This document shows, piece by piece, positions 3,013 to 63,436 of a DNA stretch of 64,000 bases (its first letter is position 1; the number at the start of each line of letters is the position of its first letter). The notes beneath the pieces were generated by a model. That model ran no database searches. It was not told the origin of the DNA and saw nothing but the letters and a program-made list of their open reading frames with translations. Origin of the DNA: Octopus sinensis (taxonomy: Eukaryota); contig NC_043020.1 in NCBI RefSeq assembly GCF_006345805.1, forward strand, positions 3,100,001 to 3,164,000, in the 5' to 3' direction. Both the position numbers and the translations under genes were made by a program.

Positions 3013-3337
3013 GTGCAGGTGGCACGTAAAAAGCACCATCCGATCGTGGCCGTTGCCAGCCTTGCCTGGCCTCCGTGCCGGTGGCGCATGAAAAGCACCA
3101 TCCGATCGTGGTCGTTTGCCAGCCTCATCTGGCACCTGTGCCGGTGGCATGTAAATAGCACCCACTACACTCACGGAGTGGTTGGCGTTAGGAAGGGCAT
3201 CCAGCTGTAGAAACACTGCCAGATCAGACTGGAGCCTGGTGCAGCCTTCTGGCTTCCCAGACCCCAGTTGAACCATCCAACCCATGCTAGCATGGAAAGC
3301 GGATGTTAAACGATGAAGATGATGATGATGATGATGA
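3013..3337 (+). mobile_element. 5'-truncated RTE LINE 3'UTR copy ending in (GAT)n
   Basis: Same sequence as the 3' part of 45503-46392 (aggaagggcatccagctgtag..catgctagcatggaaagcgga.gttaaacgatg). Further copies at ~15993-16195(-), 24008-24195(+), 44120-44630(+), 48200-48308(+), 54760-54995(+), 57078-57335(-), 63040-63425(-). Confidence 0.8.
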
Positions 3338-15435: not shown

Positions 15436-17851
15436 GGCATACTCAAACACACAGACATGTGTATGTGTAAACATAGGTGAGTGTGTGTATAGATGTATAT
15501 GTTTATATGAATGTCTATGTATGTGTAAGAAGATTCTTGAAAATAAAAAATGTAGGGGACGGAAGTCAAACATGCTTAGCTAATATTTGTTAGTAAACGT
15601 AAGGTTTTCCATATTTAAGATTTAGGTGGAGGGTGGGGGATAAATCTAAAAGCCCTGCTCGTTACTTAGCAACTATTGGGTGCAGGATTGATTTTTGTCA
15701 CATATATTTCATCTATTTTTAAGTTAAGCTGATACAAACAAAATAAATAGTAGATGAAGTAAAATCCACATTGCTTCATGAAATTGTGAAGTAAGATGGA
15801 AGAAGGTGAATGAAGTAAAAAAAAAAAAATTACACAAGAAAACTTTCCAACTGGAAAAATAAATGAAATATAAAAAAAAGAAACAAAATGAAAATGTTAT
15901 CGATTTTTTTTTTTAAACAAACCTGAACAAAATATGTTGATTGCATCAAATGTATATATGATTAACATGCAGCATTAAAAATTTGGTCCCTATCATCATC
16001 ATCATCATTTAACGTCCGTTTTCCATGCTAGCATGGGTTGGACGGTTCGACCGGGGTCTGGGATGCCAGGAGGCTGCACCAGGCTCCAGTCTGATCTGGC
16101 AGTGTTTCTACAGCTGGATGCCCTTCCTAATGCCAACCACTCCGTGAGTGTAGTGGGTGATTTTTACATGCCACCGGTACAGGAGCCAGGGGAGCTATAC
16201 ATGTATTTCATTGTTCTCATTTACTTGTGTTGATATTCATTTTTCTGCACAGTATGGGTTGGACAGGGACTTGTTAAAAGCAAGATTCATTCTCTCTGTT
16301 TTTTTCTCCATGGATTACCAAGAAAAAATATTTGAGAAAATTAAAAATGAATTTGGTGTGGAGAGGGAGAAATTAAAATATTGAGAACGTGTTTTGTGGG
16401 TGAAATCCTAATGTCCTGCATTGGAAACATAGAAATCAGAAGAAATTTAGGAAAAAATAGTGTGAGGGAGCAGAAATGTCACCTTGGACATGCTAGAAAG
16501 AATAGGTAAAGTATAGGATTTCTGGGAAAAATTTCTTTTAAGTTTATATCAAAGATCAGGTTTTTAAATATGCTCATCACAAACACAAATTACACAATAG
16601 AAAAAGATAATTTCAATTGGATTTGAGCTTTAAATTTGCACATACACACTGCAAGAAATAGCATAATTCACACAGAAGTTTTACCTAGAGTGTGTGAGTA
16701 TAAGCATGTGTGTGTGAAAGGAAGTTATTTTATGGCATTCTTTTGTTTGAAGAAACAAAATTATCAACTCGACAAATGGGGGATCATATGATTGTTCATT
16801 AATTTCTGCAAAATTCTTTTAATTTATTTATTCTTTAAAGAAAGCAGAAATTGAAAGAGAGGATAAAGAGAAAATGTGACATTTGCTTTGAAGTGAAAGT
16901 AAAAGAGAGGAGAAAGTGAAAGATGTATATGTATATGAAATGGATGTGTGTGTGTGAGAGAGAGAGTGGTGTTTGTTGTGATGTATGAATTTTTTTGCAA
17001 GTATATGTGTCACTCACTTGCTCTCTCTCTCTCTCTCTCACACACACTTTTCATATACACATACATAAATAGGCAGAGGTAAAGAATACATACACCACCC
17101 GTTTTCGGCATAACATAACCCTAAACACCAGGTGTGCTTATTCTTTACCATCGGCCATAAATGCATATGCATACATACATCTTTTCTGTGCATGAGAGAG
17201 AGAGTGATTATATCTCCTCATAACATATAGAGAAATGGATGTCTTTTAAAGCAATTTTTGGGGGTTGTGGCTTATTTTAATACAATATTTATGTGTACAA
17301 TTTCATAAATGTTTGTCTGAGTAGAATTTTATGTGTGCGTGAAACATCAGATGAAAGTGAATCATTAGAAGCAAATTGAAATATTGTCCAAAAATGACCT
17401 AAAAATTGTGCGACCCAGCCTAGTTGCCAAGGTTATTTTAGTTGTAAAAAAGAGTTGTTGAGTGAAAAACATAGTTTATTTGGTAGATAGATAATAAGCA
17501 GGGGGGTTTTGTTTTGTTATAACTCTCAAAGTTGTCAACAAACTGTCATCTAAATCAGCTGTTTTGTTAATTTCTGTAATAATTTTTTATTTACTTTTGT
17601 TTTAAAGTGAAAGAGAGGAGAAAGTGAAAAATGTATGAACATGTATATGAAGTGGACGAATGTGAGAGAGAGAGAGAGAGAGAGAGAGAGTGAGTGCCAC
17701 TTACACATACACGTGAACACACACGATCACTCACTCACTCTCTTTCTCTCTCACACACATGCACATGTACATACAAAAAAGATGTATGCATATGTAGTGA
17801 TGTAGGTACGTATACATAACACACCCCTTTAGTCACTCTCTTTCTCCCTTC

Positions 17852-17882
<31 letters not shown>

Positions 17883-20524
17883 GTCCATTTTATATACATG
17901 TACATACATCTTTCATTTTCTCCTCTCTTTCACTTTAAAACAAAAGTAAATAAATAAAAAAAATTTACGGAAATTAACGAAAGCACATGACAGCTCTGCA
18001 AGTCAAAACGAAAGATCACCTGAGCAACTTTAATATAATACAGATGTGACTAATTCAGAGAAACATTACTTTGATTATTTATACATCGTCAGTCTTGTAA
18101 TCGAACACTGTAATTTTGGTTCTAATTAAAAGCATGAAACTATTTTCACTTTCTAATGAAACCTGGTCACTGTAACTTTCGATATCATCACGTTTCACTG
18201 TTGGGTGGAGGGTAAAGTCACACGCATAAACTAAGATGCACACCTCAAGCCTGTCTCTGTTCCTGTGTGTGTGTGTGTCTGTATCTTTAGATGTGTGTGT
18301 TTGTGTGTGTCAGTTGTCACAAAAATGTATGTATACTGACAGACACAAACACCATCGCACACATATACTTGTCAGTCATCAGCCTAACATACATAACAAA
18401 CATGTGAACGCACTCATATAGAAAATGTGACATCATCGTCGTTGTGGTGGTGGTAAAAGATGTCGTTTAGGATAGGTGATTAAAAGAAAAATGATAATAT
18501 TAAATTCTTGTAATGCAAATACATGAATGAAAATATAGTTTAGTTGGTAGCCAAAAGCTTACTGAATCTTTTGATACCCCATACATCAAAATCGGCAACT
18601 CTGTTTTGGAATGCATAAGGAACACACACACACGCAAACTCTAAATTTTGAGTTAAAATTATGCTGTACCTATCCGTGAATAAGTACCAGTAAAACCAGG
18701 TTGGATGTGTACTATCTTGAATATAAATCTCAAAAGAGCTAATTTTCATTCTTCTGACATCTTCAATGCCTCAAAGATATTGATGAATTATTTCAACATA
18801 TTAATTCTAATGAAATAAAATATTTATCTTAAGCTGGAATCCTTCCAACAAAAAGAGATTAGAAAAATGCATATTTTAATTATTTTAATTCTGTGAAATT
18901 GATTTGAATGTCATGTGAAACAGAGAAATTAAAAGAATTAAGATTTTTTTTTTTTTTAACAAATTTTATACATTATTTATTTAGCATTCCTTCTTTTCTA
19001 GTTAAATTCATTATTCTTATACATTGCACGTGTGTGTGTGTGTGTGTATTGTGAAGGTATTTGTCCTAGCAGTCAGAGTGTTGTGCTCATGAATGTAAGG
19101 TCGGGGGTTTCATACCTGAGCTGGTGGTGTTCATTGTCCTTGAGCAAGGTACTTCATTTCATGTCACTCCAGTTCAGTTGGTTGACTATAAGTACCACCA
19201 CTACCACCAGAGGCTGAGGTTAACTTATAGGGGAGTGGCATCCCATTGAGGAGGAATCTTCAAGGGTATCGAAATTTAACATTGACTGTCAGCAGAAAGA
19301 GTACTCAATGCCATAGTAGAGATTAATATCTTTATTTTGGGTATGTCAGTCTCTTGCTATTTTGGAGTTTTACCTGTGTCTTTCACAGAGTCATAAGGCA
19401 AGTTATAAGAACATGGAGTCTGACTCAACCAAATCATATTCTCTCTTCAAGACTTGAAGACAGATTATAATTACTAAGCACTGAAATAGATCTACCAGAC
19501 ATATCAAGCCTAAACTACTTTTTATTTAAAAAGGACAAATCTGATACTGCAGTTCTAGATATATTATGCCTGAAAACAAGACAGGATGGTCACTGATGGA
19601 ATGCTTTTGATCATGTCTAAGCAATCAGCTGATCTGGAGTTAAACAATTCAACACCCTTTAAGCCTCTATATGGTGGCTTGACCTGCAAGAAACAGCAGG
19701 CAAATCTTCATATCACACCCTACATATTGTATTTCTAGATACAAAGTCCAACCCATGCTAGCATGGAAAGCGGACATTAAACGATGATGATGATGAAAGT
19801 ATGAAACAAGCAACTAGATGGCCATGGTTGGAATGCTCAATCATAATTTTACACAATTGGCTCTGACCAGGATAGGTGCATAAAAGAGTAACAACTGAAA
19901 ATAAGCAAGAAGCTTGCTTCCCAACCACATGGTTCTAGGTTCAGTCCCACTATGTAGCATCTTGGGCAGGTGACTTCTACTATAGCTTCAAGCTGACCAA
20001 ATACACGTAAGATGAGATGGTCCTGGGTGGAATGCTTTTAGTCATAGGTATACTCAATCAACAGTTTTCCCAGGGTTAAACAACAGCAGCGTCTCTTTTA
20101 TTGACATGACGTATGCAGTGACAGAAGTGGCAAGGAATTAATCCAAATGCAGCTGATGTGAATGAATTGCTATTTAATTATGGACCAGCTGCAGGTGAAC
20201 TGAATGGCAGCAACATGTGTGTGGGTGGTCTACAGAAACAGTTGCAGTTGATCAGAATAGAGGATGAGGGTCTGAACAGGAAATTACTGACAATTACAGT
20301 CAAAAATTATATATGTATTTATGCAAATGTGCATGTGTGTGTGTGTATAGCGAAAGTAAAGAATACATACACCCAGTGGCTAGGGTTAGGATTACATGCA
20401 GATTTTAGCATTATTTATTGCATTTTGAATTATATGATCCCAAATATTATTTTTTAAAATATGTCCATTTTAAACTGAAGTATATGTACTAAAGATACTT
20501 ATTGACTATACATTCATAATGTCA

Positions 20525-21901: not shown

Positions 21902-22689
21902 TGTGTGTGAGTGTGTGTGTGTGTGAGTGAGTGAGTGAAAAGAGGAAACCTAACAATGCAGAGATGAAAGTTGAAAAGCCGTTATGTATTTTGGGCACAA
22001 TGGCCCATTTTCAGAGGTGTACAGTCAAAGGAATGTGCCAAAGTAGATCCTACCATTGGGATAGCTGGATGGGCAGTGGCCCCATTTTAGTTCAGTGATT
22101 GTGCTAGGAGAGGCAGCTCCCCAAATGATGTATTGCTGGTGCTGTAGATGTCACACTGAGGGCAGTGGTGGAAGACAGGCTGTAGGTAGGTAGTGGTGGT
22201 GGTGAAGGTGGTTGTCAATGGGTGATGGTGTTGTCTACAATGGAGTTGTTAGCAGTGGTGGTAAATGTCATGGTTGTAGTCAGTGACAGCGTTGGAGGTA
22301 TACCACCTTGTGGTAGCCATTGACAAGTTGGTGCTGGCAACACCAACAAACTTCATCATGGCAAACAATGGCAACGGTAGTAGCCATGCTGACAGCAAAA
22401 ATGATGCTTGTATCACTGTCATAGTGATGATGTTGCTAGTCATGGTCACAGTAATGTAAGGGGCTGTTGGTAAATTATAGGAGCCACTGGCCCAACTCCA
22501 ACTGACTATTAATCTTCAGGTTAAGCTGGTAGATCAATAAGGATTCCTTGATAAGGAGATTTCTTGTATTCCTCTCTATGGTCAGTATGGAAGCATCTCT
22601 CTTTGGTGGTGTTGCCACATTTGACTAAGTGCTTGTAGAAGACACATTGGTGGTCAGGTGTTCTTTCAGTTGGATCGTACTATCAATGT

Positions 22690-23100
22690 CATACTCCAGT
22701 TGGAGAATAGAGCACTCAGTACTTGCTGCTCACGTACCTGCTTCAACAGGTATCTGGACAACATCTTCATGCTCACTATATCCCAGCAGAATGCCTCTAC
22801 AATACTGAAAAGCTTCAATGACATGGACCAGTACATCAATTTCACCATCAAATACCTGAATGACGATGGTTCCCTCGCCTTACTTGACTTTCATTTAAGA
22901 ATCACAGACAGAGGAAGAATCAACACTGTGTTCTACCAAAAGGCAGCCTGCCGAGACCTCTTCATCAATTACAAGTCAGCTTGTACATAAAGAGAATGCC
23001 TGTATACACAACAGATGCAGTGATGATGCCAACCGGGACACACAGACTGCACTTTCATAGTTAAGAAATTTGCTGAACAAATAACTTTATTCTGGTTTCC
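22690..23100 (+). mobile_element. Penelope-like element reverse transcriptase remnant
   Basis: FNRYLDNIFML..FNDMDQYINFTIKYLNDDGSLALLDFHLRIT..INTVFYQKAACRDLFINYKSA matches the PLE RT YVDD region and thumb (KFT.E...L.FLD..FY.K). Confidence 0.82.
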
Positions 23101-24194
23101 CACTGAGATGCACCATGGTAAATGTCATCTTTCATAACTCCAGGTTGTAAGTGAAATTAAATAGATGGAAACTGTATGGAAGCTCTTATTCTCATATGGC
23201 AGACTTAATCTCTCCCCTGAATTAACATCACTACCTGGTTCTCAGATGCCTTTAGCAGAGTCTAATCTGCTGTAAATATCCAAGCCCAGTTGTAAACATC
23301 CGGGCTGAAGAGAACTTCCTTGTACTGGGCCCTAAAAAAACAAAGTTGCAGGTGCTACCCTTCTTTTTCTGACTAAGTCATTAAAACTTCTAGTTCTATG
23401 AAACAAATCTGTTTTAAAGATCTTCCACCATAATTCCATTTAAGAGCCTTTAATTACATTATCACACACATCAGTTTAATAAACTAATAAATGAAACTAG
23501 TTATTTTACATCTCCAAATTCTTGATTATTTTAAAAATCAACTAAAATACAGGCAGAAAATATTTCATTAATCAATTCATTTATTTCATTAAAAGTTATG
23601 GTCATTAAATGGTTAAAGGAATCTTCAAAGAAAGTAATATGCAAATACAGCAAATTATCTACATACATGTATTATCTATTTATATCACGGTAAGTTGTCT
23701 ATACATATGTATATTCAGTAGATTATCTGCCATGTATTTAGATATATTTTGTGAATACAATAATCATCTGTATTTTTGTAGATTATATATATCATTTGCT
23801 GTGTGTATATAGATCATCTTCCATGTATATAGCTTATCAGGAGTCCCCACCACCCCTTGCTGGAGCCTCGTGGAGCTTTTAGGTGTTTTCGCTCAATAAA
23901 CACACACAACGCCCGGTCTGGAAATCGAAACCACAATCATCCTACTGCAAGTCTGCTGCCCTAACCACTAGGCCATTGCTCCTCCACTATATATACATAT
24001 ATATATACATGCAGGTGGCACGTAAAAAGCACCCACTACACTCACAGAGTGGTTGGCGTTAGGAAGGGCATCCAGATGTAGAAACACTGCCAGATCAGAC
24101 TGGGCCTGGTGCAGCCTTCGGGCTTCCCAGACCCTGTTCGAACCGTCCAACCCATGCTAGCATGGAGAACGGACAAACAATGATGATGATGATA

Positions 24195-41999: not shown

Positions 42000-43165
42000 G
42001 TTTTGGAGTGGTTATCCTTCCCATTTGTGGAGTCTTATGATGAATTGTTTTGCTTTCAGTTAGGACTCTTCTCAGCAAAAATGTGGAGTGTGCCAGTTAT
42101 ATATTCAATCCTTCCCTACAGGTCATATGGTGGACTGTAGCAGTTATTTTTCCATAGATTGTACAGTAGATTGCATCTGTTGTTTTTCCATTAAAATGTT
42201 GTTGTTTCAAAAAACATCTTGTCCTTGGATGTATGGGTTTTGTTAGATGGTCTGGCAATGTTCTGAGAGTTAGTGCAAGGGTATGAATAGCCATTCTTCA
42301 TTAGAACTTTTCTGGATTGTATGGTGTTGGTGTTTGTTCTTCCTGCCTTTCTACATTTACTGTGTATCTTGTGAATTACATTTCTAATGAAGGTCATCTT
42401 AGCTTTGATGGGCAAGGATGAATTATGATGCACAAATAGGCCCCTGTATGCTGCTTCTCTGTAATTTTGAGTTCAAAATCAATTAGAGATAAGCAGTTAT
42501 CAAGGTGCACCACTTCAAATTTTATTTGTTCATTGATACTGTTGAACATATTGTATATTTTATCAGTTTCTTCATGTAATGATGTTAATATGGGGTTGTC
42601 ATCCATACACCTGATGAAAAAGGTGCAGGACTGATAGCTGTTGAACGCTGGTCCATATACATGATGGCCAGTAGGCCTGTCGAGTTTGACCCCAATCAGC
42701 AGTCCAGAGATTTGTTTGTAAATAGACCCTTTGAACTGGAAGAAGGTGTTGACCATTATAGTAGATAATGGTTCATGGATATCTGGAGATGTGAGCCCAA
42801 AGGTTGTGAGAGGAGACAATGTCTTCAGTTAATAAGTTGATAACTGGGATTGCGTCAAAAAACACCTACAAAAATAGTTACTCCACCTAAGGCATCCAGA
42901 TTTCCATTGATGCTACAGAAAGAAACACTGGGAACTTGAGACTAAAAGAAGCTCTTTTAATTAAGAAATATACACCACTTATTAATAATAGGTCAGAGTT
43001 GCACATGGCCAATTGTTTATAGTGACGTATATCAAATACACTTATATACAAGACACAGAAATCAGTGAATAACAACATTCCTCCAAAGATTTCCTGAGGA
43101 AGGGGTCCTGGCCCTGAAATACTGAAATACCATGTAAAAACTATCAACCTGTTTATTTTTATAAA
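42000..43165. mobile_element. Penelope-like element with inverted 5' part: RT on minus strand, endonuclease C-terminus and 3' end on plus strand
   Basis: Minus strand 42190-42830 gives NTFFQFKGSIYKQISGLLIG..FFIRCMDD..INEQIKFEV..LSLIDF and HHNSSLPIKAK. Plus strand 42850-43020 gives ERNTGNLRLKEALLIKKYTPLINNRSEL, followed by CTGAGGA aggg..ccct GAAA at 43094-43119. Confidence 0.75.
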
Positions 43166-45456
43166 TTGCTGTGAAAAAAAACATGATTAAAAATTGATAA
43201 TTTCCTATTGTTTAAATTTTTTTATATCTGTAGATACATTTTAACCTTTTGTTTAATACATGGTTTTGTCTTCAGGGTCAAAGAGTGCCGTAATATTTAT
43301 ATTTGCTCTAAACTGTTCTTTGAGTAAAAATTAAATTTGAGTTCTTTAATATAGAAGCTTTGTTGTTGGTTCAGAAACTGAAAGATCTATAATACTATTC
43401 TACTAATCACAAAATATGTTTGTTACATTTTAAACAAACTTCACAATGGGATGAAATATTAAGTATCGTATTACAATTTTATTTAGTTCTATAGAATTTC
43501 CACAAGTCCTTCCAGCAGTTACTAATGATGTGATAGACTGACATAAAATGGTTCATATGTATGTATACACACACACACACAGAGTCATAAACACAAGTGT
43601 GGCTGTGTGGTAAGGAGTTTGCTTCACAACCACATATTTCCAGCTCAGTCCCTCTGCATAGCACCTTGGGTAAGCGTCTTCTACCATTGCCCCAGGATGA
43701 CCAAGGCCTTGTGAGTGAGTGTGTGTTTGTGTTTTCTTGTTCTGACATCACAGGATAATTGTAAAATGATTGTCACCATCATACAAGCAGTGTTGTTCAT
43801 TTCCAATATTCTGCAAGAACATGTTTGGCTATGAGGAAATATTACCTTGCTTGGAAAAAGATGAGGGTTGGTGAGAGGAAGGGCATCCAGCTGTAAAGAA
43901 TCTGTCTCAATAAACTTGCAGATGTTTGATGATGATGATGATGGCAATTTACCCTCCCCACTTTTCAGTCTTCACACTAAGAAGCTTTGGGAGAGACACT
44001 AACTTAGTGTACCACCAGCAAACAAAAGGTTCAAAAGTAAATTTCACCACAACAAGCTGTAAATTCAATTACTGAAGTATGAAGTTTTAAGACTTTCAAA
44101 TATGGAACTGTTCAAAGGCATGAGTTTTTAATTAAATATTGTTGAGACCATAACCCGTGGCCTTTACCTGGGATGTAGCCAGTCCACTTATGCATACCTT
44201 TCCTCCTTGGGACACAAAACTCTGCTTGCGAAGATCTGTTGAGGCAATCGAAATCAATCAAAAAACCAATGGAAATTGTAGTTGTGGTACCAGTGCCGGT
44301 GGCACATAAAAAGATCCATCTGAACATGGCTGTTGTCAGTGCCACCTCGATTGGCGGTGGCACGTAAAAAGCACCAACCGATCGTGGCCATTGCCAGCCT
44401 CCCCTGGCACCTGTGCCGGTGGTACGTAAAAAGCACCCACTACACTCACGGAGTGTAGTTGGCGTTAGGAAGGGCATCCAGCTGTAGAAACACTGCCAGA
44501 TCGGACAGGAGCCTGGTGCAGCCTCCTGGCTTCCCAGACCCCGGTTGAACTGTCCAACCCGAGCTAGCATGGAAAACAGACGTTAAATGATGATGATGAT
44601 GATGGTGGTGATGGTGATGATGATGATGATTGTTGCTGCTGCTATTCTTCGTGTTTCTGTTTTTGTTTTCTGCAACTATTTCCATGGTTCACATTTTTCA
44701 TACTTTTTAAGTTTTCTTTGTATTTTGTTTCCATGTCTTTGAAAATATTGCCATTATTATTATTATTTCTATTACAGTCTTTTATAGATTTCAATAAAAA
44801 ATTAATGTAGATGCTTAGCTAAACAAAGACACCTTAGCTCCGTTAGTATATCAAGCATTTCCTCCACCATCTCTCCCTCCACTAGCCCATCTCTGACCAC
44901 CACCACTGATGTTATCTCTATCAAACATCAAATGACCCTGTACATGCTCACTCATCCTGCTAGAAATAGTGGCTAAATTTCTCTTAATTTGCATCCTAGC
45001 CTCTTTAAAAAACGGAAGGACACATTGGTGTCATAAGCATACAAAAAAAAACCCCAGTCATTACAAATGGAATACTTTTGATCACTGGCTTGCTTGATCA
45101 GAGACGACCCGGGGTTTAACAGCACCACCAACAACATCTACAGTCATTGCTATGTTTATATGATTTGAAAAAATCAATAGAAACATAGATGAGTAATGAG
45201 AGAAAAGAAGTGTTTGAAATTCTGTTGGTTTAAAGGAAATGTAAGACAATGGCAGTTGATATGAAGCTGTGTATTGATGAAGTTCAGAGATGAGATGAGG
45301 TGAGATGATATTATTGGAGTAATAAAGTTATTGGACCATTAACTGCTACAGTTGCTGTTGAGTTTTGTTTTCACTTCTGCTTGTTTGTATCTACTTTGTT
45401 TTTTTAATTTGCACCAGTATTTTCATTATGTGTGTGTGTGTGTGTATATATATGTG

Positions 45457-45502
<46 letters not shown>

Positions 45503-46392
45503 AGACCAGGAAAACCTGGGACGAGGTGGTGAAGCACGACTTTCGGACGTTAGGTCTCACCATGGAAATGACTAGAGACCGAGACCTATGGAAGTATGCT
45601 GTGCGTGAGAAGACCCGGCAAGACTAGTGAAGCCATAATCCATGGCCCCTACCTGGGACGTAGTCAGTCCACCTGTGCATACCTTCCTTCTTGTGACACT
45701 TGTGAAGACATGTTGAGGCAAGTGAGAATCGAATCGAATCGAATCGTATCAAATCAAATCGAACCAAATCAAAATAGATGAACATCAATGGAATTTGTAT
45801 CCTTGTGGTACCAGTGCCGGTGGCACATAAGAAAACCATCCGAACGTGACCGTAGCCAGTACCGCAATGACTGGCCTCCGTGCTGAGGGCACGTAACAAA
45901 CACCATCCGAGCGTGGCCGTCCGCCAGCCTCGTCTAGCACCCGTGTCGGTGACACATAAGAAAACACCATCCGAGCGTGGCCGTCTGCCAGCCTCGTCTG
46001 GCACCTGTGTCGGTGGCACATAAAAAACACCATCCGAGCGTGGCCGTCTGCCAGCCTCGTCTGGCACCTGTGTCGGTGGCACATAAAAAAACACCATCCG
46101 AGCGTGGCCGTCTGCCAGCCTCGTCTGGCACCTGTGTCGGTGGCACATAAAAAACACCATCCGAGCGTGGCCGTCTGCCAGCCTCGTCTGGCACCTGTGT
46201 CGGTGGCACATAAAATCACCCACTACACTCTCGGAGTGGTTGGCGTTAGGAAGGGCATCCAGCTGTAGAAACACTACCACATCTGACTGGCCTGGTGCAG
46301 CCTTCGGGCTTCCCAGACCCCAGTTGAACCGTCCAACCCATGCTAGCATGGAAAGCGGACGTTAAACGATGATGATGATGATGATGATGATG
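45503..46392 (+). mobile_element. RTE LINE 3' end (ORF2 C-terminus + long 3'UTR with internal VNTR + (GAT)n tail)
   Basis: TRKTWDEVVKHDFRTLGLTMEMTRDRDLWKYAVREKTRQD* (stop at 45625-45627) is a typical RTE ORF2 terminus. It is followed by the UTR shared with many truncated copies. Confidence 0.85.
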
Positions 46393-46552
46393 ATCGCCAT
46401 ACTAATATGGCATTCTTATAAAAATAAGAATAAAGCTGACCGCTTATTAGCTCCATGAGGCCATCGCCTTAAGTTAGCTATTTGATACACAAACTGTATC
46501 CATATAACCTTTGAACAAGGGAGGTCAGGCGCTCCACACTACTTGGCCGGCA

Positions 46553-46594
46553 GCTACAGACGCGTTTCGGGGTATTGCCCCTTTTCAGTGCAGC
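46553..46594 (-). ncRNA. Minimal type I hammerhead ribozyme, copy 1 (C3/A8 mismatch)
   Basis: Minus strand reads GCUGCA CUGAAAA GGGG caaua CCCC GAAA C gc G UC^ UGUAGC: 6-bp stem I, 4-bp stem II, palindromic ACGCGU stem III, GUC cleavage triplet. Confidence 0.7.
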
Positions 46595-46915
46595 GTAGCC
46601 AAACCAGTAGGTGTCGCTTCCGACAATCTCTGTTCAAAGGTTTTATTTACCTAGCTTCGGTGGAATACATCCACTTGTTTTCAATAATAGAAATATTAAA
46701 ATTACTAAGTCTCTCTAAAAGAGAACAACGGCAGCGTTCCCGGAAAATATTAGTTATCGCCATACTAATATGGCATTCTTATAAAAATAAGAATAAAGCT
46801 GACCGCTTATTAGCTCCATGAGGCCATCGCCTTAAGTTAGCTATTTGATACACAAACTGTATCCATATAACCTTTGAACAAGGGAGGTCAGGCGCTCCAC
46901 ACTACTTGGCCGGCA

Positions 46916-46957
46916 GCTACAGACGCGTTTCGGGGTATTGCCCCTTTTCAATGCAGC
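46916..46957 (-). ncRNA. Minimal type I hammerhead ribozyme, copy 2 (U3-A8 core)
   Basis: GCUGCA UUGAAAA GGGG caaua CCCC GAAA C gc G UC^ UGUAGC. Confidence 0.82.
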
Positions 46958-47278
46958 GTAGCCAAACCAGTAGGTGTCGCTTCCGACAATCTCTGTTCAA
47001 AGGTTTTATTTACCTAGCTTCGGTGGAATACATCCACTTGTTTTCAATAATAGAAATATTAAAATTACTAAGTCTCTCTAAAAGAGAACAACGGCAGCGT
47101 TCCCGGAAAATATTAGTTATCGCCATACTAATATGGCATTCTTATAAAAATAAGAATAAAGCTGACCGCTTATTAGCTCCATGAGGCCATCGCCTTAAGT
47201 TAGCTATTTGATACACAAACTGTATCCATATAACCTTTGAACAAGGGAGGTCAGGCGCTCCACACTACTTGGCCGGCA

Positions 47279-47320
47279 GCTACAGACGCGTTTCGGGGTA
47301 TTGCCCCTTTTCAATGCAGC
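47279..47320 (-). ncRNA. Minimal type I hammerhead ribozyme, copy 3 (U3-A8 core)
   Basis: Identical to copy 2. Confidence 0.82.
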
Positions 47321-47640
47321 GTAGCCAAACCAGTAGGTGTCGCTTCCGACAATCTCTGTTCAAAGGTTTTATTTACCTAGCTTCGGTGGAATACATCCAC
47401 TTGTTTTCAATAATAGAAATATTAAAATTACTAAGTCTCTCTAAGAGAGAACAACGGCAGCGTTCCGGAAAATATTAGTTATCGCCATACTAATATGGCA
47501 TTCTTATAAAAATAAGAATAAAGCTGACCGCTTATTAGCTCCATGAGGCCATCGCCTTAAGTTAGCTATTTGATACACAAACTGTATCCATATAACCTTT
47601 GAACAAGGGAGGTCAGTCGCTCCACACTACTTGGCCGGCA

Positions 47641-47682
47641 GCTACAGACGCGTTTCGGGGTATTGCCCCTTTTCAATGCAGC
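47641..47682 (-). ncRNA. Minimal type I hammerhead ribozyme, copy 4 (U3-A8 core)
   Basis: Identical to copy 2. Confidence 0.82.
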
Positions 47683-47854
47683 GTAGCCAAACCAGTAGGT
47701 GTCGCTTCCGACAATCTCTGTCCAAAGGTTTTAGAGAGACTTAGTAATTTTAATATTTCTATTATTGAAAACAAGTGGATGTATTCCACCGAAGCTAGGT
47801 AAATAAAACCTTTGAACAGAGACTGTCGGAAGCGACACCTACTGGTTTGGCTAC

Positions 47855-47896
47855 GCTGCATTGAAAAGGGGCAATACCCCGAAACGCGTCTGTAGC
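47855..47896 (+). ncRNA. Minimal type I hammerhead ribozyme, copy 5 (in the inverted unit; U3-A8 core)
   Basis: Read directly on + strand: gctgca ttgaaaa gggg caata cccc gaaa c gc g tc tgtagc. Confidence 0.82.
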
Positions 47897-48304
47897 TGCC
47901 GGCCAAGTAGTGTGGAGCGACTGACCTCCCTTGTTCAAAGGTTATATGGATACAGTTTGTGTATCAAATAGCTAACTTAAGGCGATGGCCTCATGGAGCT
48001 AATAAGCGGTCAGCTTTATTCTTATTTTTATAAGAATGCCATATTAGTATGGCGATAACTAATATTTTCCGGGAACGCTGCCGTTGTTCTCTTTTAGAGA
48101 GACTTAGTAATTTTAATATTTCTATTATATATATATATATATATATATACTGGAGCCTGTGAGTGTGTATGTGTGTGTGTATATATATATATATATGTAG
48201 ACTGGAGCCTGGTGCAGCCTCCTGGCTTCCCAGACCCCGGTCGAACCGTCCAACCCATGCTAGCATGGAAAACAGACGTTAAACGATTATGATAATGATG
48301 ATGA

Positions 48305-48399
<95 letters not shown>

Positions 48400-48949
48400 A
48401 AGGTAGGTAGGTAGGGAGGGAGGTAGGCAGGCAGATATTCAAACTTAACAATAAGAACAACACAGAAAGTAGAAACAAAATATGCTTCTTATTAGTTTGA
48501 TACTCAATGAGTGTTAGAAAGCAGGAGTGTCTTTGAGGCTTTGAATGCAAGTTCTTCTTCAGAAAGTTGTATGGTACCATAAAAGCAACATGACAGGTTT
48601 GGAAAGACTAGAAGAAAGTGGGTAGCAGAGAAGCTAGATGACAGGTGTTTTTAGCAAGGGGAGAAGCAAAAAGTAGGAGGCTTTCAGGTATACTATGATA
48701 AGAGGATGAAACACATGAGGAATTTCAAATTGCAAGACAATGTACCAAAAAGAACTGAGAATGCGCTGAGATGTGAATGAGAAATGTGTATGGATAACTA
48801 ATAGCACACCTGCAGTTAGTGTTTCTGAAAAGAAAGAAATAGGGAAATATTACTATGGAAGGGTATAAAATATGGATAATGTTTAGAAGAAAGAGGGTTT
48901 TCACAGTGTCAACCAAGCAGTGGGACATTCTCATGAACAAAAGTATAAT

Positions 48950-50560
48950 CATCATCATCAGCATTATCATCATTTAACGTCCATTGTCCATGCTAGCATG
49001 GGTTGGATGGTGTGGCCAGAGCTGGTAAGCCAGGGGGCTGCACCACATTCCAGTCTGATTTGGCATGGCTTCTATAGCTGGATGCCCTTCCTAATGCTAA
49101 CCACATTACAGAGTGTTCTGGATGGTTTTACATGGCACTGCATGGGCAATTCTACATGTTGCCACATGGGTGCCTTTACATGTCACCACACAGGTGCTTT
49201 TATGTGGCACCGCAACGAGTGCTTTACACCACCATAAGGATCAGTTTAAAACACTTCTGCTATGGTGTGTGGGTCTTCTTGAGTATGGCCAGGTGTCAGC
49301 TATCTTGGTCCTTTGTCACCACACCTGAAAGTTCGGTGTTCTGAGGTCATTCTTCAGTACTTCATCCCATGTCTTCCTGGGTCTTCCACTCCCATATGTT
49401 CTATCCACTTTGAGAGATTGGCATTTCTTTATGGAACTGTCAGCATCCATCCACATCACATGACCAAACCAGCGCAGTCACCTCTTTTGCATACAGCAGC
49501 AAATTCCTCTTATGCCTACCTTAGCTCTCAGAGCAGTGGCACTCTGTTGAACAAGTACACTTACATTACGCATCCAGCAGAGCATACTAGCATCATTCCT
49601 TTCTAATCTTTGAGAGAGAAACCTTTTGTGGCCAACAGAAGCAACAAGCTCTCTGAATTTCCTCCATTCTATTCTTATTCTTGCTATTACTCTTTCCACG
49701 CATCCTCTCCACAACTAATTTGGTCCCTTAGGTAGCAGAAATTATCTACTACCTCTAATGAGCCACCAGGGCAAATAATAGATAAAGTAATTACAAATAT
49801 AAAGTCAGGAAAAGCCCCTGTTCCAGGAATTGCTGCAGAGATGCTTAAAATATCCAGAGGAATAGGAATCAAGCTAGTTGTGAATATAGTCAATCAGGTT
49901 GCACAAGAAGGTGTCATACCCAAGATTGGCATAGCAGCATCATAGTCAACTGTTACAAGATTAAAGAAGATATCTTAGAGAAACATAATTACAAAGGTAT
50001 CAAATTAATGAACTTGGTCATGTAAGTTACAGGAAGAGTTATAGCTCAATTGAATAGAAAGAGAGTTAGTCTAGTTGAGTCTGTGCCAGGAACAAGTAGC
50101 ATTGATGCCATCTTACATGTGAGATGAACTTAGCTATGGAGAAGTACTTAGCTATGAGTAAGAAAAAGTTTCTAAAATTTGTTGGCCTAAAGAAAGCCTT
50201 TGTAATCTGGTGGTCACTGTGGAAACTAGGAGTAGGTGAATGGCTTGTGAGAGTCATAGAAGCCATGCATAGAGATGCTGCCAGCAAAGTGAGAGTTAGC
50301 AACTAGCGACAAATTCAGTGTGCAGGAAGATGTCCTCTAGGGCTTGGTTCTAAGTTACTTTGTACTTATAGTCCGACAGGCCATAACAGAGGAGTTTAAG
50401 AATGAATGCCCATGGGAATTCCTATATGCTGATGACCTTGTTGAATTTGTAGTTAAGATTAAAATGGGAATTCCAGGAGTGGAAGCAAAATCTGGAATCA
50501 AAAGGCTTCAAAGTTAACTTATCAAAGACTAAGGTATTAATAAGAAAGATATGTAGAGAA
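48950..50560. mobile_element. RTE LINE with inverted 5' segment
   Basis: Minus strand 48950-49777 has CPGGSLEVVDNFCYLRDQIS..RLERNDASMLCWM, then UTR and tail. Plus strand 49778-50560 has IKSGKAP..EMLK..LKKAF..WWSLWKLGVGEWLVRV..PWEFLYADDL (RT domain). Confidence 0.8.
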
Positions 50561-55882: not shown

Positions 55883-57335
55883 ATCTGATTTCAGATGGCT
55901 ATAGTGTTGATTCAAACGGACTACAGTGCTACTGTAATCAACAAGTTTCACAGAACATCAACCCCAGTACTGAACTGGTATTTATTTCATCAGCCCCAAA
56001 AGGATGAAAGGTAAAGTCCACCTCGACAGAATTTGAACTTAGAAATTCTGCCAGCTTGCTGCCTTTTTCTACCCTTCAATATTGAATTCACTTCTTCTGA
56101 AAGCCCTAGATTTGACCAACAATTTACTAGAATCAATGGTCTCAGCATCAGAATCATTCTAAATACTAGAATGTCACTCCTGTGTTGTGATTCTTACTGG
56201 ACAAAAAAGAAGGCAGCCCAATGTTTGATGGTTCTGTTTGGCGCTACAATTGGATTGATGTTGCTGGTTTCATCAGGTTCTTTAACCTAGATACCTTAAA
56301 AAACATACCCATTCCCACAGTTCAGCCTTGCACAGGGTCAATAGCTGGGCAATCTCAAGCCACAAGAATGGCTATATCAGGATGAATTTTATAAATATAT
56401 TCAAAGAATTTAGCCTTACTATAACATCCTGAGCTGACTTCCTAAGTCTTGCACTAAACCACAAAACAAGCAACCATTCTTTCTACAGAAAACCCTTTGA
56501 GAAAACTGTTTATATCCACAGAAATTCAAATCACCCTTCATATATACATATGTACACAAACACAAATACACAAACATACACTAATATATATATATATCTA
56601 CATATACATATATTTATATACACACATACATAGTAATATATATGCATATGTATTTATACACATGTATATAAATATATATGTATATATCTGATTGAATCTT
56701 TGCGTCAACAAGTACCTCCTTGCGACAATGTAGCCTTTAATCTAATCAAGATATCCTTGGCCTGAAGACTAGCCGGCAATAAACATCTAACTTAGATTTT
56801 ACCACTTCTGAGGTTCTAGTCACTATGAAATATATGTAGTCCAGATTTCCCATATTTCATTCTGTAATTTTTTTTGCACACTCCACAACCCTGGTTGCCT
56901 ACTGAGGAATATAAAAAGAACTTATTTCAGCTCTTCGATAAAAGTTAGAAAATCCACAATCTTCCATCTCAATAAACCACTACTGTCTTGAAAGTTGTTT
57001 TATATTCACCACGGATTGCTCGAAGCTAACTTTCTTCCTACACCTCAATCTCTGGATCTTATATATATACATATATATCATCATCATCGTTTAACGTCTG
57101 TTTTCCGTGCTAGCATGGGTTGGACGGTTCGACCGGGGTCTGGGAAGCCAGAAGGCTGCACCAGGCTCCAGTCTGATCTGGCAGTGTTTCTACAGCTGGA
57201 TGCCCTTCCTAACGCCAACCACTCTGTGAATGTAGTGGGTGCTTTTTACGTGCCACCGGCACAGATGCCAGGGGAGGCTGGCAGCGGCCACGATCGGTTG
57301 GTGCTTTTTACGTGCGACAGGCACAGAAGCCAGTC

Positions 57336-59417: not shown

Positions 59418-60407
59418 ATGTATTCTTCGAATGTATCTCGGTCAACAGGGAGGTTGGACTCCATGACCAACTCCCTCCCTAATTCTCGCAGTGGTCACCA
59501 CTATTCTTCGTTATCGTCTCCATCCAAGTCTTCTAATGGCTCAATGATTGAGCATCGCAAACACAGCGGAGGGACCAGCGGTACCTCATCTGTCTCGTCC
59601 AAATTATTGTCTCCGCGCCGAAGTAGGTCCAGCGGAACGGATAGTAGTAGCCAAGGTAGCCGTTCCAGCAGCCCCCTTGACATGTCCACAGACAGCATTC
59701 AGTCTGTAAATTCAGCCTACAACCTGAGCCAATCTTATGTCCTAGATGGACACACAAGTCCGATTCCTTCCCTCTATGACAGCCGTTCCAGTAGCATGAC
59801 CAGTGTAAGAAGCTATATGCGAGATCGGTCTTTAGAAAGAAATAGCGACAATGATAGAATGTCCTCTTCAGGTATTTATTCAGATGGTCGATCACAATCA
59901 TCCGAAACCAGTAGGTATCCAACGTTGGGCACTGGCGGTCGAGATCACCGCGATTTGGCCCCCACCAGCTCTGGTAGTGTCCGAGAACGCCGCCCTAGTT
60001 ACCAACTCTCCTCTTCGTCATCTCGTGATCGTTCTTTAGACAGAGAGTATCCTCATATGGGAGCTAGATCCTTGGAAAGGGACTATGCTTTCCATCACAA
60101 CCGCAATCGAAGTTTTGATTTGGCCGAGGTACTTTCTTCCAGTTTCACTTCGCAGTCCGTCATGGATGTCCGACTCAAGGACCAGATTATTTTGGATTTG
60201 CAAAACCAGATAGCCGAATTAAACAGAGACTGTTTACAGTATCAAAGGGATGCAGAAAATTCAAATGAAAAATTAAACTCTTGCATGAACAGTATTAAAA
60301 CTTTTTGGAGTCCCGAATTGAAAAAGGAAAGGGCTCAGCGAAAGGAAGAGGTTTCTAAATACCTTAACTTAAACGAGCAACTGAAAATTACCCAGGCTGA
60401 ATTTAAG
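59418..60407 (+). CDS. ERC1: First large coding exon of an ERC/ELKS/CAST/Bruchpilot-family presynaptic active-zone protein (330 codons; gene continues beyond the window)
   Basis: A Ser/Arg-rich N-terminus leads into a coiled coil containing KLNSCMNSIKTFWSPELKKERAQRKEE, the ERC/CAST signature (IKTFWSPELKKER). ATG is in accATG context with an in-frame TAG at 59385-59387. The exon ends at a phase-0 donor AAG|GTAAGA (60407/60408). ERC1 versus ERC2 is not resolvable in an invertebrate, and the N-terminus could extend from an upstream exon. Confidence 0.92.
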
Positions 60408-63042: not shown

Positions 63043-63436
63043 CATCATCATCTTCATCGTTTATTATCTGTTTTCCATGCTGGCATGGGTTGGATGGTTA
63101 GACTGGGGTCTGGGAAGCCAGGAAGCTACACCAGACTCCAGTCTGATCTGGCATTGCTTCTACAGCCGGATGCTCTTTTTAATGCCAACCACTCCAAGAG
63201 TGTAGTGGGTGCTTTTTATGTGCCACCGACACTGGGCCAGATGGGGCTGGCATCAATCACGATCAGATGCTGCTTTTTACATGTCACCGGCATTGGAGCC
63301 AGTCAAGGTTGCACTGGCATTGGCCACATTTGGATGGTGCTTGTTTATGTGCCACCAGCACAGGAGCCAGTTTGGGCGAGCAGGCGAGCATCAACCACGT
63401 TCGGATGGTGGTTTTTATCTGCCATATATATGTATT

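What the first reader, a model, noticed from the sequence alone, without database searches (positions are those of the whole stretch)
46393..48128. Retrozyme-like array: 363-bp tandem units, each with a hammerhead ribozyme, a possible source of circular RNA
Seen: about 3.7 head-to-tail copies of a 363/362-bp unit plus about 1.1 inverted copies, nearly identical, with no recognisable protein. Each has one minimal type I hammerhead (6-bp stem I, GGGG/CCCC stem II, palindromic ACGCGU stem III, GUC site). Established: such minimal hammerheads occur in Penelope-like element terminal repeats and in metazoan non-LTR retrozymes, which are tandem ~150-400-nt units processed to monomers and circles. Palindromic stem III allows cleavage as a dimer. 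Inference: a minus-strand transcript would cleave at 47647/47646, 47285/47284, 46922/46921 and possibly 46559/46558, releasing 362-363-nt monomers that could circularise. The high identity suggests a young, possibly active, family mobilised by PLE enzymes (PLE RT remnants lie at 22.7 kb and 42.2 kb). I do not recognise it as a described cephalopod family but cannot search.
Basis: partly seen in the sequence, partly recalled or inferred. Interest (0 to 1): 0.93.

Follow-up and report, generated by a model that had tools for sequence, protein, structure and literature searches.

The report
Hammerhead-ribozyme tandem repeat (retrozyme-like insertion)
A young, non-coding 363-bp tandem repeat, each unit carrying a hammerhead self-cleaving RNA motif with an unusual but known core variant, inserted into the microsatellite tail of a SINE; it looks like a new member of the known animal "non-LTR retrozymes", with RNA cleavage and circle formation still untested.

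Summary
There are 3.7 head-to-tail copies of a 363-bp unit (46393-47733) and a 400-bp inverted arm (47729-48128), 99-100% identical. Each unit has one type I hammerhead motif at the stated cleavage sites.

- **Core variant.** The core is UUGAAAA, a U3-A8 pair instead of C3-G8. This covariation is already reported in Schistosoma Penelope-like element (PLE) hammerheads. The copy at 46594-46553 has a C3·A8 mismatch.
- **Chance.** A generic descriptor matches nothing else in the window: 0.005 hits expected per shuffled window, and 0 of 20,000 shuffled units match.
- **Rfam.** Its hammerhead models find nothing, but they also miss canonical control hammerheads with a 1-bp helix III.
- **Fold.** The monomer folds into a strongly self-paired structure (z = -6) that contains helices I and II.
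- **Insertion anatomy.** The array sits exactly between the (GAT)n and (TA)n parts of a SINE tail. The two arms lie head to head with 5-nt microhomology, as in PLE-type integration.
- **PLE remnants.** Degraded PLE reverse-transcriptase remnants at 22.7 and 42.4 kb are confirmed but unrelated in sequence and age.

Verdict: a new member of a known kind, the metazoan non-LTR retrozyme. No relatives could be retrieved, so covariation, copy number, cleavage and circular RNA remain untested. Interest is moderate.

The parts
46393..47733 (-). Direct arm: 3.69 head-to-tail units. The ribozyme (sense) strand is the minus strand. In unit coordinates counted from the cleavage site, the 5' end is at position 277 (window 47733) and the 3' end at position 166 (window 46393).
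47285..47646 (-). Predicted monomer 1, cleavage site to cleavage site, 362 nt. It carries a 1-nt deletion near 47466, T>C at 47445 and C>A at 47617.
46922..47284 (-). Predicted monomer 2, 363 nt, used as the reference. Circular minimum free energy is -117.9 kcal/mol, z = -6.0, and the fold contains helices I and II.
46559..46921 (-). Predicted monomer 3, 363 nt. Its 3' boundary depends on the impaired C3·A8 hammerhead.
47641..47682 (-). Type I hammerhead motif with U3-A8 core; cleavage after C at 47647.
47279..47320 (-). Type I hammerhead motif with U3-A8 core; cleavage after C at 47285.
46916..46957 (-). Type I hammerhead motif with U3-A8 core; cleavage after C at 46922.
46553..46594 (-). Hammerhead copy with T>C at 46588 (sense strand), giving a C3·A8 mismatch. 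Probably impaired. C17 is at 46559.
   Evidence: not accepted by the descriptor
47729..48128 (+). Inverted arm: one unit plus 37 nt, sense strand is the plus strand (unit position 202 to 238). It lies head to head with the direct arm.
47855..47896 (+). Type I hammerhead motif with U3-A8 core in the inverted arm; cleavage between 47890 and 47891. It is the only ribozyme on this strand, so no monomer can be released from it alone.
47729..47733 (.). Head-to-head junction of the two 5'-truncated arms: 5 nt (TTTTA) shared by both arms, a microhomology.
46368..46394 (.). (GAT)9 tail of the host SINE, forming the left border of the insertion.
48129..48150 (.). (TA)n forming the right border of the insertion. 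It is inferred to be the second half of the same SINE tail, because 5 of 9 other SINE copies in the window have (GAT)n directly followed by (TA)n.
46200..46367 (+). 3' body of the host SINE whose tail received the insertion. About 10 copies of this SINE lie in the window.

Best explanation
This is a retrotransposed, non-coding, hammerhead-bearing tandem element of the metazoan non-LTR retrozyme type, inserted recently into the (GAT)n/(TA)n tail of a SINE.

**Shown by the sequence**
- Each 363-bp unit encodes, on one strand only, a type I hammerhead. It has a 6-bp helix I that continues through a UAC/U internal loop into a long, almost unit-length helix. It has a 4-bp helix II with a CAAUA loop, and a 1-bp helix III with a palindromic CGCG loop.
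- The core is fully canonical except that the C3-G8 pair is replaced by U3-A8.
- The insertion consists of two 5'-truncated arms in opposite orientation. They meet at a 5-nt microhomology, and their 3' ends abut the two microsatellite halves.

**Inferred**
- A minus-strand transcript of the direct arm would cleave after GUC at 47647, 47285 and 46922, and less well at 46559. It could do so as single ribozymes or as double hammerheads paired through ACGCGU.
- Cleavage would release 362-363-nt RNAs with 5'-OH and 2',3'-cyclic phosphate ends. A host RtcB-type ligase or the ribozyme itself could then close them into highly self-paired circles.
- A PLE reverse transcriptase/GIY-YIG endonuclease supplied in trans would copy longer-than-unit RNA into microsatellite targets. 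Priming from both sides of the break (twin-priming-like) would give the tandem-plus-inverted structure.
- Any transcript crossing the junction would also fold into a roughly 270-400-bp hairpin.

**Confidence.** The figure of 0.75 is for the identity of the element, a genuine hammerhead-bearing retrozyme-type insertion. That the RNA actually cleaves and circularises in vivo I put at about 0.5.
For: - **Array and identity:**
- **Motif beyond chance:** it is unique in the window, with 0.005 hits expected per shuffled window and 0 of 20,000 shuffled units matching.
- **Fold:** the monomer's minimum free energy structure contains helix I, the UAC/U internal loop and helix II, with z = -6.0 against dinucleotide shuffles.
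- **Layout:** UAC lies 5' of a 6-bp helix I and loop 2 is A-rich, as in the Rfam HH9 type I consensus printed.
- **Dimer:** the dimer fold is -40.7 kcal/mol against 2 x -17.3, with a 6-bp intermolecular helix III of -8.9.
- **Core variant:** U3-A8 covariation is reported in about 1,300 PLE-associated hammerheads of Schistosoma (PMC4209133).
- **Class criteria:** type I hammerhead, 150-450-bp tandem units, GC below 45-50%, no LTR/PBS/PPT, self-paired RNA of 170-400 nt (PMC7229834). Here the unit is 363 bp with 41% GC and has no protein.
- **Insertion site:** the array lies exactly between (GAT)9 and (TA)n, while 5 of 9 paralogous SINE tails read (GAT)n(TA)n uninterrupted.
- **PLE-type integration:** partial tandems, an adjacent inverted 5'-truncated copy and a microsatellite, notably (TA)n, target bias are described for PLE insertions (PMC8557442).
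- **PLEs in this genome:** the ORF at 42397-42819 has 85 homologues. All 8 long ones scanned have RVT_1 and 4 also have a C-terminal GIY-YIG domain. The 22.7-kb fragment aligns to one of them at E = 7e-13.
- **Link to PLEs:** non-LTR retrozymes co-occur with PLEs and are related to PLE terminal repeats (pLTRs) (preprint 10.64898/2026.07.22.740005).
Against: - No Rfam hammerhead model matches, even at E <= 10 on a 101-nt slice. This is weakened by the control.
- All copies come from one insertion, so there is no independent covariation evidence for any helix or for the 3-8 pair.
- No homologous unit was found, so it is not shown that this is a dispersed family.
- PLE-type hammerheads with short helix III cleave poorly in vitro, and the U3-A8 core may lower activity further.
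- Neither 3' end of the insertion lies at the cleavage site. One variant (unit position 30, C>A) is present only in the two copies flanking the junction. That does not fit simple rolling-circle copying of one homogeneous monomeric circle. It suggests an uncleaved multimeric template or later gene conversion.
- The PLE remnants in the window are degraded and share no sequence with the unit.
Confidence: 0.75

Rival explanations
1. The unit is not an independent element. It is the terminal repeat (pLTR) of an autonomous Penelope-like element, present here as an ORF-less multimerised fragment of a catalogued PLE family.
For: PLE terminal repeats carry hammerheads, and PLE insertions form tandems with inverted 5'-truncated copies. 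In Xenopus, retrozyme families are sister to PLE pLTRs. PLE reverse-transcriptase remnants exist in the window.
Against: There are 3.7 consecutive 363-bp units with no ORF between them. There is no RT/GIY-YIG ORF adjacent and no similarity between the unit and the PLE remnants or anything else in the window. The hammerhead has the canonical type I layout (6-bp helix I, 4-bp helix II, no bulge after A9) rather than the long-helix-II, bulged minimal PLE form.
Confidence: 0.15
2. The hammerhead is a catalytically dead or very weak relic. The locus is effectively an inert young tandem and inverted repeat, and its main RNA consequence, if transcribed, is a long hairpin feeding small-RNA pathways.
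For: The non-canonical positions 3 and 8, and one copy with a C3·A8 mismatch. No Rfam match. Low in vitro activity of PLE-type hammerheads. A 269-400-nt near-perfect inverted repeat, which is what the sub-threshold miRNA-precursor matches reflect. The variant pattern suggests the template was an uncleaved multimer.
Against: The 3-8 change is compensatory and is a recurrent natural variant. All other core positions, G10.1-C11.1, the A15.1-U16.1 pair, the palindromic loop 3 and the internal loop of helix I are intact. The near-identity of the copies shows that the family was mobile recently.
Confidence: 0.2
3. Assembly artefact: a single unit or a fold-back chimeric read inflated into a tandem and inverted array.
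For: PLE-type tandem and inverted structures are known to trouble assemblies. Depth and reads cannot be inspected here.
Against: The copies differ by private substitutions and one indel. The arms are out of register (5' ends at unit positions 277 and 202), each has its own variants, and they are bordered by different unique flanks.
Confidence: 0.03
4. Ordinary satellite or minisatellite in which a hammerhead-like string occurs by chance.
For: Only one locus is available, and there is no Rfam support.
Against: 0 of 20,000 shuffled units and 0.005 hits per shuffled window match the descriptor. The motif is embedded in a fold that forms helices I and II unprompted. The insertion anatomy points to retrotransposition into a SINE tail, not local slippage.
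Confidence: 0.01

Closest known systems
Metazoan non-LTR retrozymes (Cervera & de la Pena 2020, PMC7229834), for example those of the mussel Mytilus galloprovincialis, the coral Acropora and the axolotl or newt satellite 2
   Same: A type I hammerhead once per unit. Head-to-tail units of 150-450 bp (here 363). Low GC (41%). No ORF, LTR, PBS or PPT. A strongly self-paired monomer RNA. Co-occurrence with PLEs in the genome.
   Different: The core has U3-A8 instead of C3-G8. Only one locus is known so far, and expression and circular RNA are untested. The insertion shows an inverted 5'-truncated arm and exact microsatellite borders, features documented mainly for PLEs. The host appears to be a mollusc, possibly a cephalopod, for which I found no published retrozyme.
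Minimal hammerheads in the terminal repeats of Penelope-like elements (Cervera & de la Pena 2014, PMC4209133)
   Same: Type I topology, a very short helix III with a palindromic sequence that allows dimeric action, a G10.1-C11.1 pair, and the U3-A8 core covariation described for Schistosoma PLE-associated motifs.
   Different: PLE minimal hammerheads have a longer helix II (6-8 bp), a shorter helix I (4-5 bp or less) and an extra nucleotide between A9 and G10.1. Here helix II is 4 bp, helix I is 6 bp with an internal loop and a long extension, there is no bulge, and no RT/EN ORF lies between the repeats.
Canonical metazoan type I hammerheads (Schistosoma Sm-alpha, amniote HH9; Rfam RF00163 and RF02275)
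   Same: A 6-bp helix I preceded by an unpaired UAC, a 4-bp helix II with an A-rich loop, GAAA, and a GUC cleavage site (HH9 consensus).
   Different: Scores below any reportable Rfam threshold. The core has U3-A8. Helix III is only 1 bp. Loop 2 has 5 nt rather than 6, and the 3' side of the internal loop is a single U.
Plant LTR retrozymes (Cervera et al. 2016, PMC4918200)
   Same: Non-autonomous, hammerhead-processed retroelements proposed to spread through circular RNA.
   Different: The plant elements have type III hammerheads inside LTRs, PBS and PPT, 600-1000-nt circles, GC above 55%, and are mobilised by Ty3/Gypsy enzymes. None of that applies here.

Membership tests
Hammerhead ribozyme, type I | Conserved core C3 U4 G5 A6 N7 G8 A9 / G12 A13 A14 / A15.1-U16.1 / H17 | tested here: inconclusive
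   U4, G5, A6, A9, G12, A13, A14, A15.1, U16.1 and C17 are canonical. Positions 3 and 8 are U and A, a compensatory exchange of the C3-G8 pair, in 4 copies, and C·A in 1 copy. This variant is documented in nature, but its activity here is unknown.
Hammerhead ribozyme, type I | Three helices around the core, with the open end at helix I and a G10.1-C11.1 pair | tested here: met
   Helix I is 6/6 bp, helix II is 4 bp starting with G-C, and helix III is A-U plus a CGCG loop. Helices I and II appear in the unconstrained minimum free energy fold of the whole monomer.
Hammerhead ribozyme, type I | Match to the Rfam covariance models (RF00163, RF02275 and others) at the gathering score | tested here: not met
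   No hammerhead match at the gathering score or at E <= 10. In the control, two canonical CUGAUGA type I motifs with 1-bp helix III (L001, L003) are also missed, and a third (L002) reaches only 23.9 bits against a threshold of 52.
Hammerhead ribozyme, type I | Helices supported by covariation among independent homologues | not testable with these tools
   No homologous unit was found in the window, the protein-indexed collections or the metagenome scan.
Hammerhead ribozyme, type I | Site-specific self-cleavage | not testable with these tools
   Needs in vitro transcription or RNA end mapping.
Metazoan non-LTR retrozyme | Type I hammerhead within short head-to-tail repeats (monomer about 150-450 bp, dimers to multimers) | tested here: met
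   363-bp unit, 3.7 direct copies plus 1.1 inverted, one motif per unit. The criterion comes from PMC7229834.
Metazoan non-LTR retrozyme | Low GC (below 45-50%), no coding capacity, no LTR, PBS or PPT | tested here: met
   GC is 41%. The longest ORF is 92 aa, lies antisense to the ribozyme and has no homologue. There is no tRNA-like part. PBS and PPT were not searched for specifically.
Metazoan non-LTR retrozyme | Monomer RNA highly self-paired | tested here: met
   Circular minimum free energy is -117.9 kcal/mol against -85.4 +/- 5.4 for shuffles, z = -6.0.
Metazoan non-LTR retrozyme | Dispersed multi-copy family in the genome | tested here: inconclusive
   There is one locus in 64 kb.
Metazoan non-LTR retrozyme | Expressed as unit-length linear and circular RNA | not testable with these tools
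   No transcriptome access.
Autonomous Penelope-like element (pLTR-ORF-pLTR) | RT plus GIY-YIG ORF between the direct repeats | tested here: not met
   The units are contiguous and no ORF lies between or beside them. The nearest PLE RT remnant is 3.6 kb away, degraded and unrelated in sequence to the unit.
Autonomous Penelope-like element (pLTR-ORF-pLTR) | Insertion anatomy: partial tandem, adjacent inverted 5'-truncated copy, microsatellite target | tested here: met
   Head-to-head arms with 5-nt microhomology, and borders at (GAT)9 and (TA)n inside a SINE tail. The features are as described in PMC8557442.
PLE minimal hammerhead (min-HHR) | Long helix II (6-8 bp), short helix I, unpaired nucleotide between A9 and G10.1 | tested here: not met
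   Helix II is 4 bp, helix I is 6 bp, and no extra nucleotide is needed (bulge = 0 solution).

The most novel reading that the evidence does not exclude
A currently active retrozyme family of a mollusc, possibly a cephalopod. It would use a natural U3-A8 hammerhead in a tertiary-stabilised (canonical type I) scaffold and produce abundant 363-nt circular RNAs. This insertion, with its clean empty-site analogue, twin 5'-truncated arms and a variant shared across the junction, would record how PLE machinery copies multimeric rather than monomeric-circular retrozyme RNA.
Probability: 0.3. Interest if true: 0.55.

Novelty: new member of a known kind. Interest (0 to 1): 0.4.

Why it matters
If the family is active, it would extend hammerhead-processed circular-RNA retroelements to a lineage where I found none described.

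It would also provide a natural U3-A8 core in a canonical type I scaffold. That is a ready-made test of how much the C3-G8 pair identity matters in vivo.

Finally, it offers an unusually legible insertion: an exact microsatellite target, twin arms and microhomology. This bears on the open question of whether retrozymes are copied from circles or from multimeric transcripts by PLE enzymes.

None of this changes the existing picture of retrozymes. It adds a case.

Tried and rejected
1. **Rfam, three ways.** I ran the whole window at gathering score, a 1.9-kb slice at E <= 10 and a 101-nt slice at E <= 10. No hammerhead match appeared. The miRNA-family matches (MIR2630, MIR5070, mir-297 and others) are all far below gathering score. 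They merely reflect the long inverted repeat and the (TA)n run, so I rejected them.
2. **Protein-indexed search for copies elsewhere.** I queried with the unit's 92-aa antisense ORF and found none.
3. **Metagenome DNA scan with a degenerate hammerhead pattern.** It gave three unrelated canonical type I hammerheads (L001-L003), which served only as controls. None is a homologue of the unit.
4. **Identifying the species through the ERC/CAST exon.** The best database hit is 63% identical, and named hits are molluscs and annelids at 35-47%. The source species and its close relatives are therefore not in the collection. The 63% contig (L004) has no unit or SINE.
5. **Pfam on the two RT remnants.** Nothing was found. 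The word-indexed search on the 42.4-kb ORF also found nothing. Only the exhaustive HMMER search recovered PLE proteins.
6. **A GIY-YIG-like string downstream of the 42.4-kb remnant.** It was read by eye and is not supported by BLASTP.
7. **The 102-nt direct repeat flanking the array (46290-46391 and 48207-48308) as a target-site duplication.** I rejected this. It is 92% identical against over 99% for the units, and it is simply two copies of the SINE 3' end.
8. **A tRNA-like part of the unit.** None was found.
9. **Przybilski & Hammann 2007 on exchanges of the 3-8 pair.** The paper is not held. Only its citation was seen.
Full report
**1. Observation**

Tandem Repeats Finder reports one array at 46393-47733 with period 363, 3.7 copies and 99% matches. 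Repeat finding and BLAST of one unit against the window give direct copies at 46393, 46756, 47119 and 47481. They also give an inverted arm at 47729-48128 (400 nt), 99-100% complementary to the direct copies. The 64 kb holds no other copy.

The string GAAACGCGUC occurs four times on the minus strand, with the cleavage-site C at 47647, 47285, 46922 and 46559. It occurs once on the plus strand, with C at 47890.

**2. The ribozyme motif**

Read on the sense strand, each unit contains GCUGCA-UUGAAAA-GGGG-CAAUA-CCCC-GAAA-CGCG-UC^UGUAGC. This has type I topology:
- a 6-bp helix I, which is the open end;
- a 4-bp helix II beginning with G10.1-C11.1 and a 5-nt loop;
- G12 A13 A14;
- an A15.1-U16.1 pair closing a palindromic CGCG;
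- C17.

Position 3 is U and position 8 is A. C3 and G8 form a Watson-Crick pair in the active fold (PMC3884650), so this is a compensatory exchange. The same U3-A8 covariation was reported for about 1,300 PLE-associated hammerheads in Schistosoma mansoni (PMC4209133).

The 3'-most direct copy (46594-46553) carries T>C at 46588, which gives a C3·A8 mismatch.

**3. Is the motif more than chance?**

I wrote a generic descriptor. It accepts C3-G8 or U3-A8, helix I with at least 5 of 6 pairs, helix II of 3-8 bp starting with G-C, an optional bulge, GAAA, up to 12 nt between A15.1 and U16.1, and H17. On both strands of the window it hits only the four U3-A8 copies in the array. Dinucleotide-preserving shuffles of the window give 0.005 hits on average. 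None of 20,000 shuffled units, each duplicated so that a motif could span the junction, has a hit. The descriptor was written after seeing the motif, but its ranges are those of the published descriptors.

**4. Rfam**

No hammerhead family matches at gathering score. None matches at E <= 10 on 1.9 kb or on a 101-nt slice. To see what this means, I scanned metagenome contigs for a degenerate pattern. This recovered three unrelated, fully canonical type I hammerheads with CUGAUGA or CUGAAGA cores and the same 1-bp helix III with a palindromic loop. Rfam misses two of them entirely and gives the third 23.9 bits against a threshold of 52. The negative result is real and must be reported. It reflects the models' poor fit to this short-helix-III class, not evidence against the motif.

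**5. Structural context**

The 363-nt monomer taken from cleavage site to cleavage site folds, without constraints, into a structure containing:
- helix I;
- an internal loop (UAC on the 5' strand, U on the 3' strand);
- a long branched extension of helix I that uses almost the whole unit;
- helix II.

The circular minimum free energy is -117.9 kcal/mol against -85.4 +/- 5.4 for shuffles, z = -6.0. GC is 41%.

An unpaired UAC immediately 5' of a 6-bp helix I, together with an A-rich loop 2, is also the layout of the Rfam HH9 consensus shown. From memory, it is the layout of the Schistosoma ribozyme too. That suggests loop-loop tertiary contacts, but I could not test them.

Two 52-nt ribozyme domains co-fold into a double hammerhead with an intermolecular ACGCGU/ACGCGU helix III. 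The energy is -40.7 against 2 x -17.3 kcal/mol, and the duplex alone is -8.9.

In architecture the motif is closer to the 'canonical' metazoan type I hammerhead of retrozymes than to the 'minimal' PLE form. The minimal form has a 6-8-bp helix II, a short helix I and a bulged nucleotide after A9.

**6. Anatomy of the insertion**

I use unit coordinates counted from the cleavage site.
- The direct arm (sense is the minus strand) runs from its 5' end at position 277 (47733) through three full units to its 3' end at position 166 (46393).
- The inverted arm (sense is the plus strand) runs from position 202 (47729) through one full unit to position 238 (48128), one unit plus 37 nt.
- The two 5'-truncated ends meet head to head and share 5 nt (TTTTA, 47729-47733).
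- The 3' ends abut (GAT)9 on the left and (TA)n on the right.

The left flank is the 3' end of a SINE present about 10 times in the window. In 5 of the 9 other copies the tail reads (GAT)n directly followed by (TA)n. The array therefore sits exactly at the (GAT)n/(TA)n boundary of a SINE tail. The paralogous tails serve as an analogue of the empty site. No target-site duplication can be discerned.

The 102-nt direct repeat flanking the array is just a second SINE 3' end, 92% identical, and not a duplication made by the insertion.

Partial tandems, an adjacent inverted 5'-truncated copy and a microsatellite target bias, (TA)n in particular, are the published hallmarks of PLE integration (PMC8557442). 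I read the structure as priming of reverse transcription from both sides of a staggered break, followed by microhomology joining. This is inference.

**7. What the variants say**

The direct arm differs from the reference unit at five positions in 1341 nt, and the inverted arm at two in 400 nt. The insertion is therefore young.

One variant, C>A at unit position 30, is present only in the two copies on either side of the junction (47617 and 47920). Neither 3' end of the insertion coincides with the ribozyme cleavage site. Copying of a single homogeneous monomeric circle would have put any template variant into every copy. The pattern fits better with a heterogeneous, uncleaved multimeric template, or with later gene conversion between the inverted arms. 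I cannot decide between these two.

**8. PLE remnants**

Pfam does not recognise either remnant, and a word-indexed search found nothing. An exhaustive HMMER search with the ORF at 42397-42819 (minus strand) found 85 proteins at E <= 0.001. All 8 long ones scanned have RVT_1, and 4 of them also have a C-terminal GIY-YIG domain at about 800-1160 aa, the canonical EN+ PLE architecture. The fragment at about 22.7 kb aligns to residues 549-627 of one of these at E = 7e-13.

However, both are riddled with stops and frameshifts, share nothing with the unit and are clearly older than the array. They show that PLEs have lived in this genome, not that one is active now.

**9. Comparison with what is known**

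The element meets every sequence-level criterion of the metazoan non-LTR retrozymes (PMC7229834): a type I hammerhead, 150-450-bp tandem units, low GC, no coding capacity and a highly self-paired RNA of 170-400 nt. [quoted passage not shown]

The criteria I could not test are dispersal as a family, expression, circularity and cleavage.

I found no paper describing retrozymes or hammerheads in cephalopods. The library is incomplete, and Repbase and Dfam are not available here.

The host is a lophotrochozoan, most likely a mollusc. The ERC/CAST exon at 59418-60407 has named hits in Dreissena, Batillaria, Lottia and an annelid at 35-47%, and one unnamed hit at 63%.

**10. Verdict**

This is a real, non-chance hammerhead-bearing tandem insertion. 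It is best filed as a new member of a known kind, the metazoan non-LTR retrozyme. It has two mildly unusual traits. One is a U3-A8 core in an otherwise canonical type I scaffold. The other is an unusually legible PLE-style insertion anatomy.

Function (cleavage, circles, current mobility) remains inferred.

Noticed in passing
window 45888-46215: A 63-bp unit (also scored as a 127-bp unit) repeated 5.2 times at 95-96% identity, lying inside the 5' part of the SINE whose tail received the insertion. It is an internal tandem expansion of a SINE segment.
   Followed up: partly
window 3142-3312, 16008-16176, 19746-19783, 24014-24174, 44417-44587, 46200-46368, 48200-48285, 48973-49130, 57088-57258, 63072-63229: About 10 copies (77-92% identical) of one SINE ending in ...CATGCTAGCATGGAAA.CGGACGTTAAACG. 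Its tail is (GAT)n, followed in most copies by (TA)n. This composite microsatellite tail is the target of the retrozyme-like insertion.
   Followed up: partly
window 59418-60407 (+): A long first coding exon of an ELKS/CAST/ERC active-zone protein (Pfam Cast, E = 5.7e-17). The best database relative is only 63% identical. The array lies about 11 kb upstream, and the sense strand of its direct arm is antisense to this gene.
   Followed up: partly
window about 22650-23000 (+) and 42397-42819 (-): Degraded Penelope-like element reverse-transcriptase remnants. Pfam and the word-indexed search miss them. They are recognisable only through exhaustive HMMER and comparison with RVT_1 plus GIY-YIG proteins.
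   Followed up: yes
window 47617 and 47920: The same substitution (unit position 30, C>A on the sense strand) occurs only in the two copies that flank the head-to-head junction. It hints at a shared template segment or at gene conversion between the inverted arms.
   Followed up: partly
window 47465-48072: A 269-nt near-perfect inverted repeat with a 70-nt spacer (up to 400 nt with more distant copies). Any read-through transcript would form a long hairpin. This explains the sub-threshold Rfam miRNA-precursor matches (MIR2630 at 68.9 bits against 144, MIR5070, MIR812).
   Followed up: partly
L001 14-43 (-), L002 1740-1769 (+), L003 2311-2340 (+): Metagenome contigs (ERZ1739169 and WNGL01048539.1) carry canonical type I hammerheads with a GGGG/CCCC helix II and a 1-bp helix III closed by a 4-nt loop (palindromic in L001 and L002). 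Rfam 15 misses L001 and L003 and scores L002 far below threshold, which is a sensitivity gap for this hammerhead class.
   Followed up: partly
window 48306-48414: A (GATA)27 microsatellite follows the (TA)n tail of the second, 5'-truncated SINE copy. The whole 48.1-48.4-kb stretch is a patchwork of TA, TG and GATA repeats.
   Followed up: no
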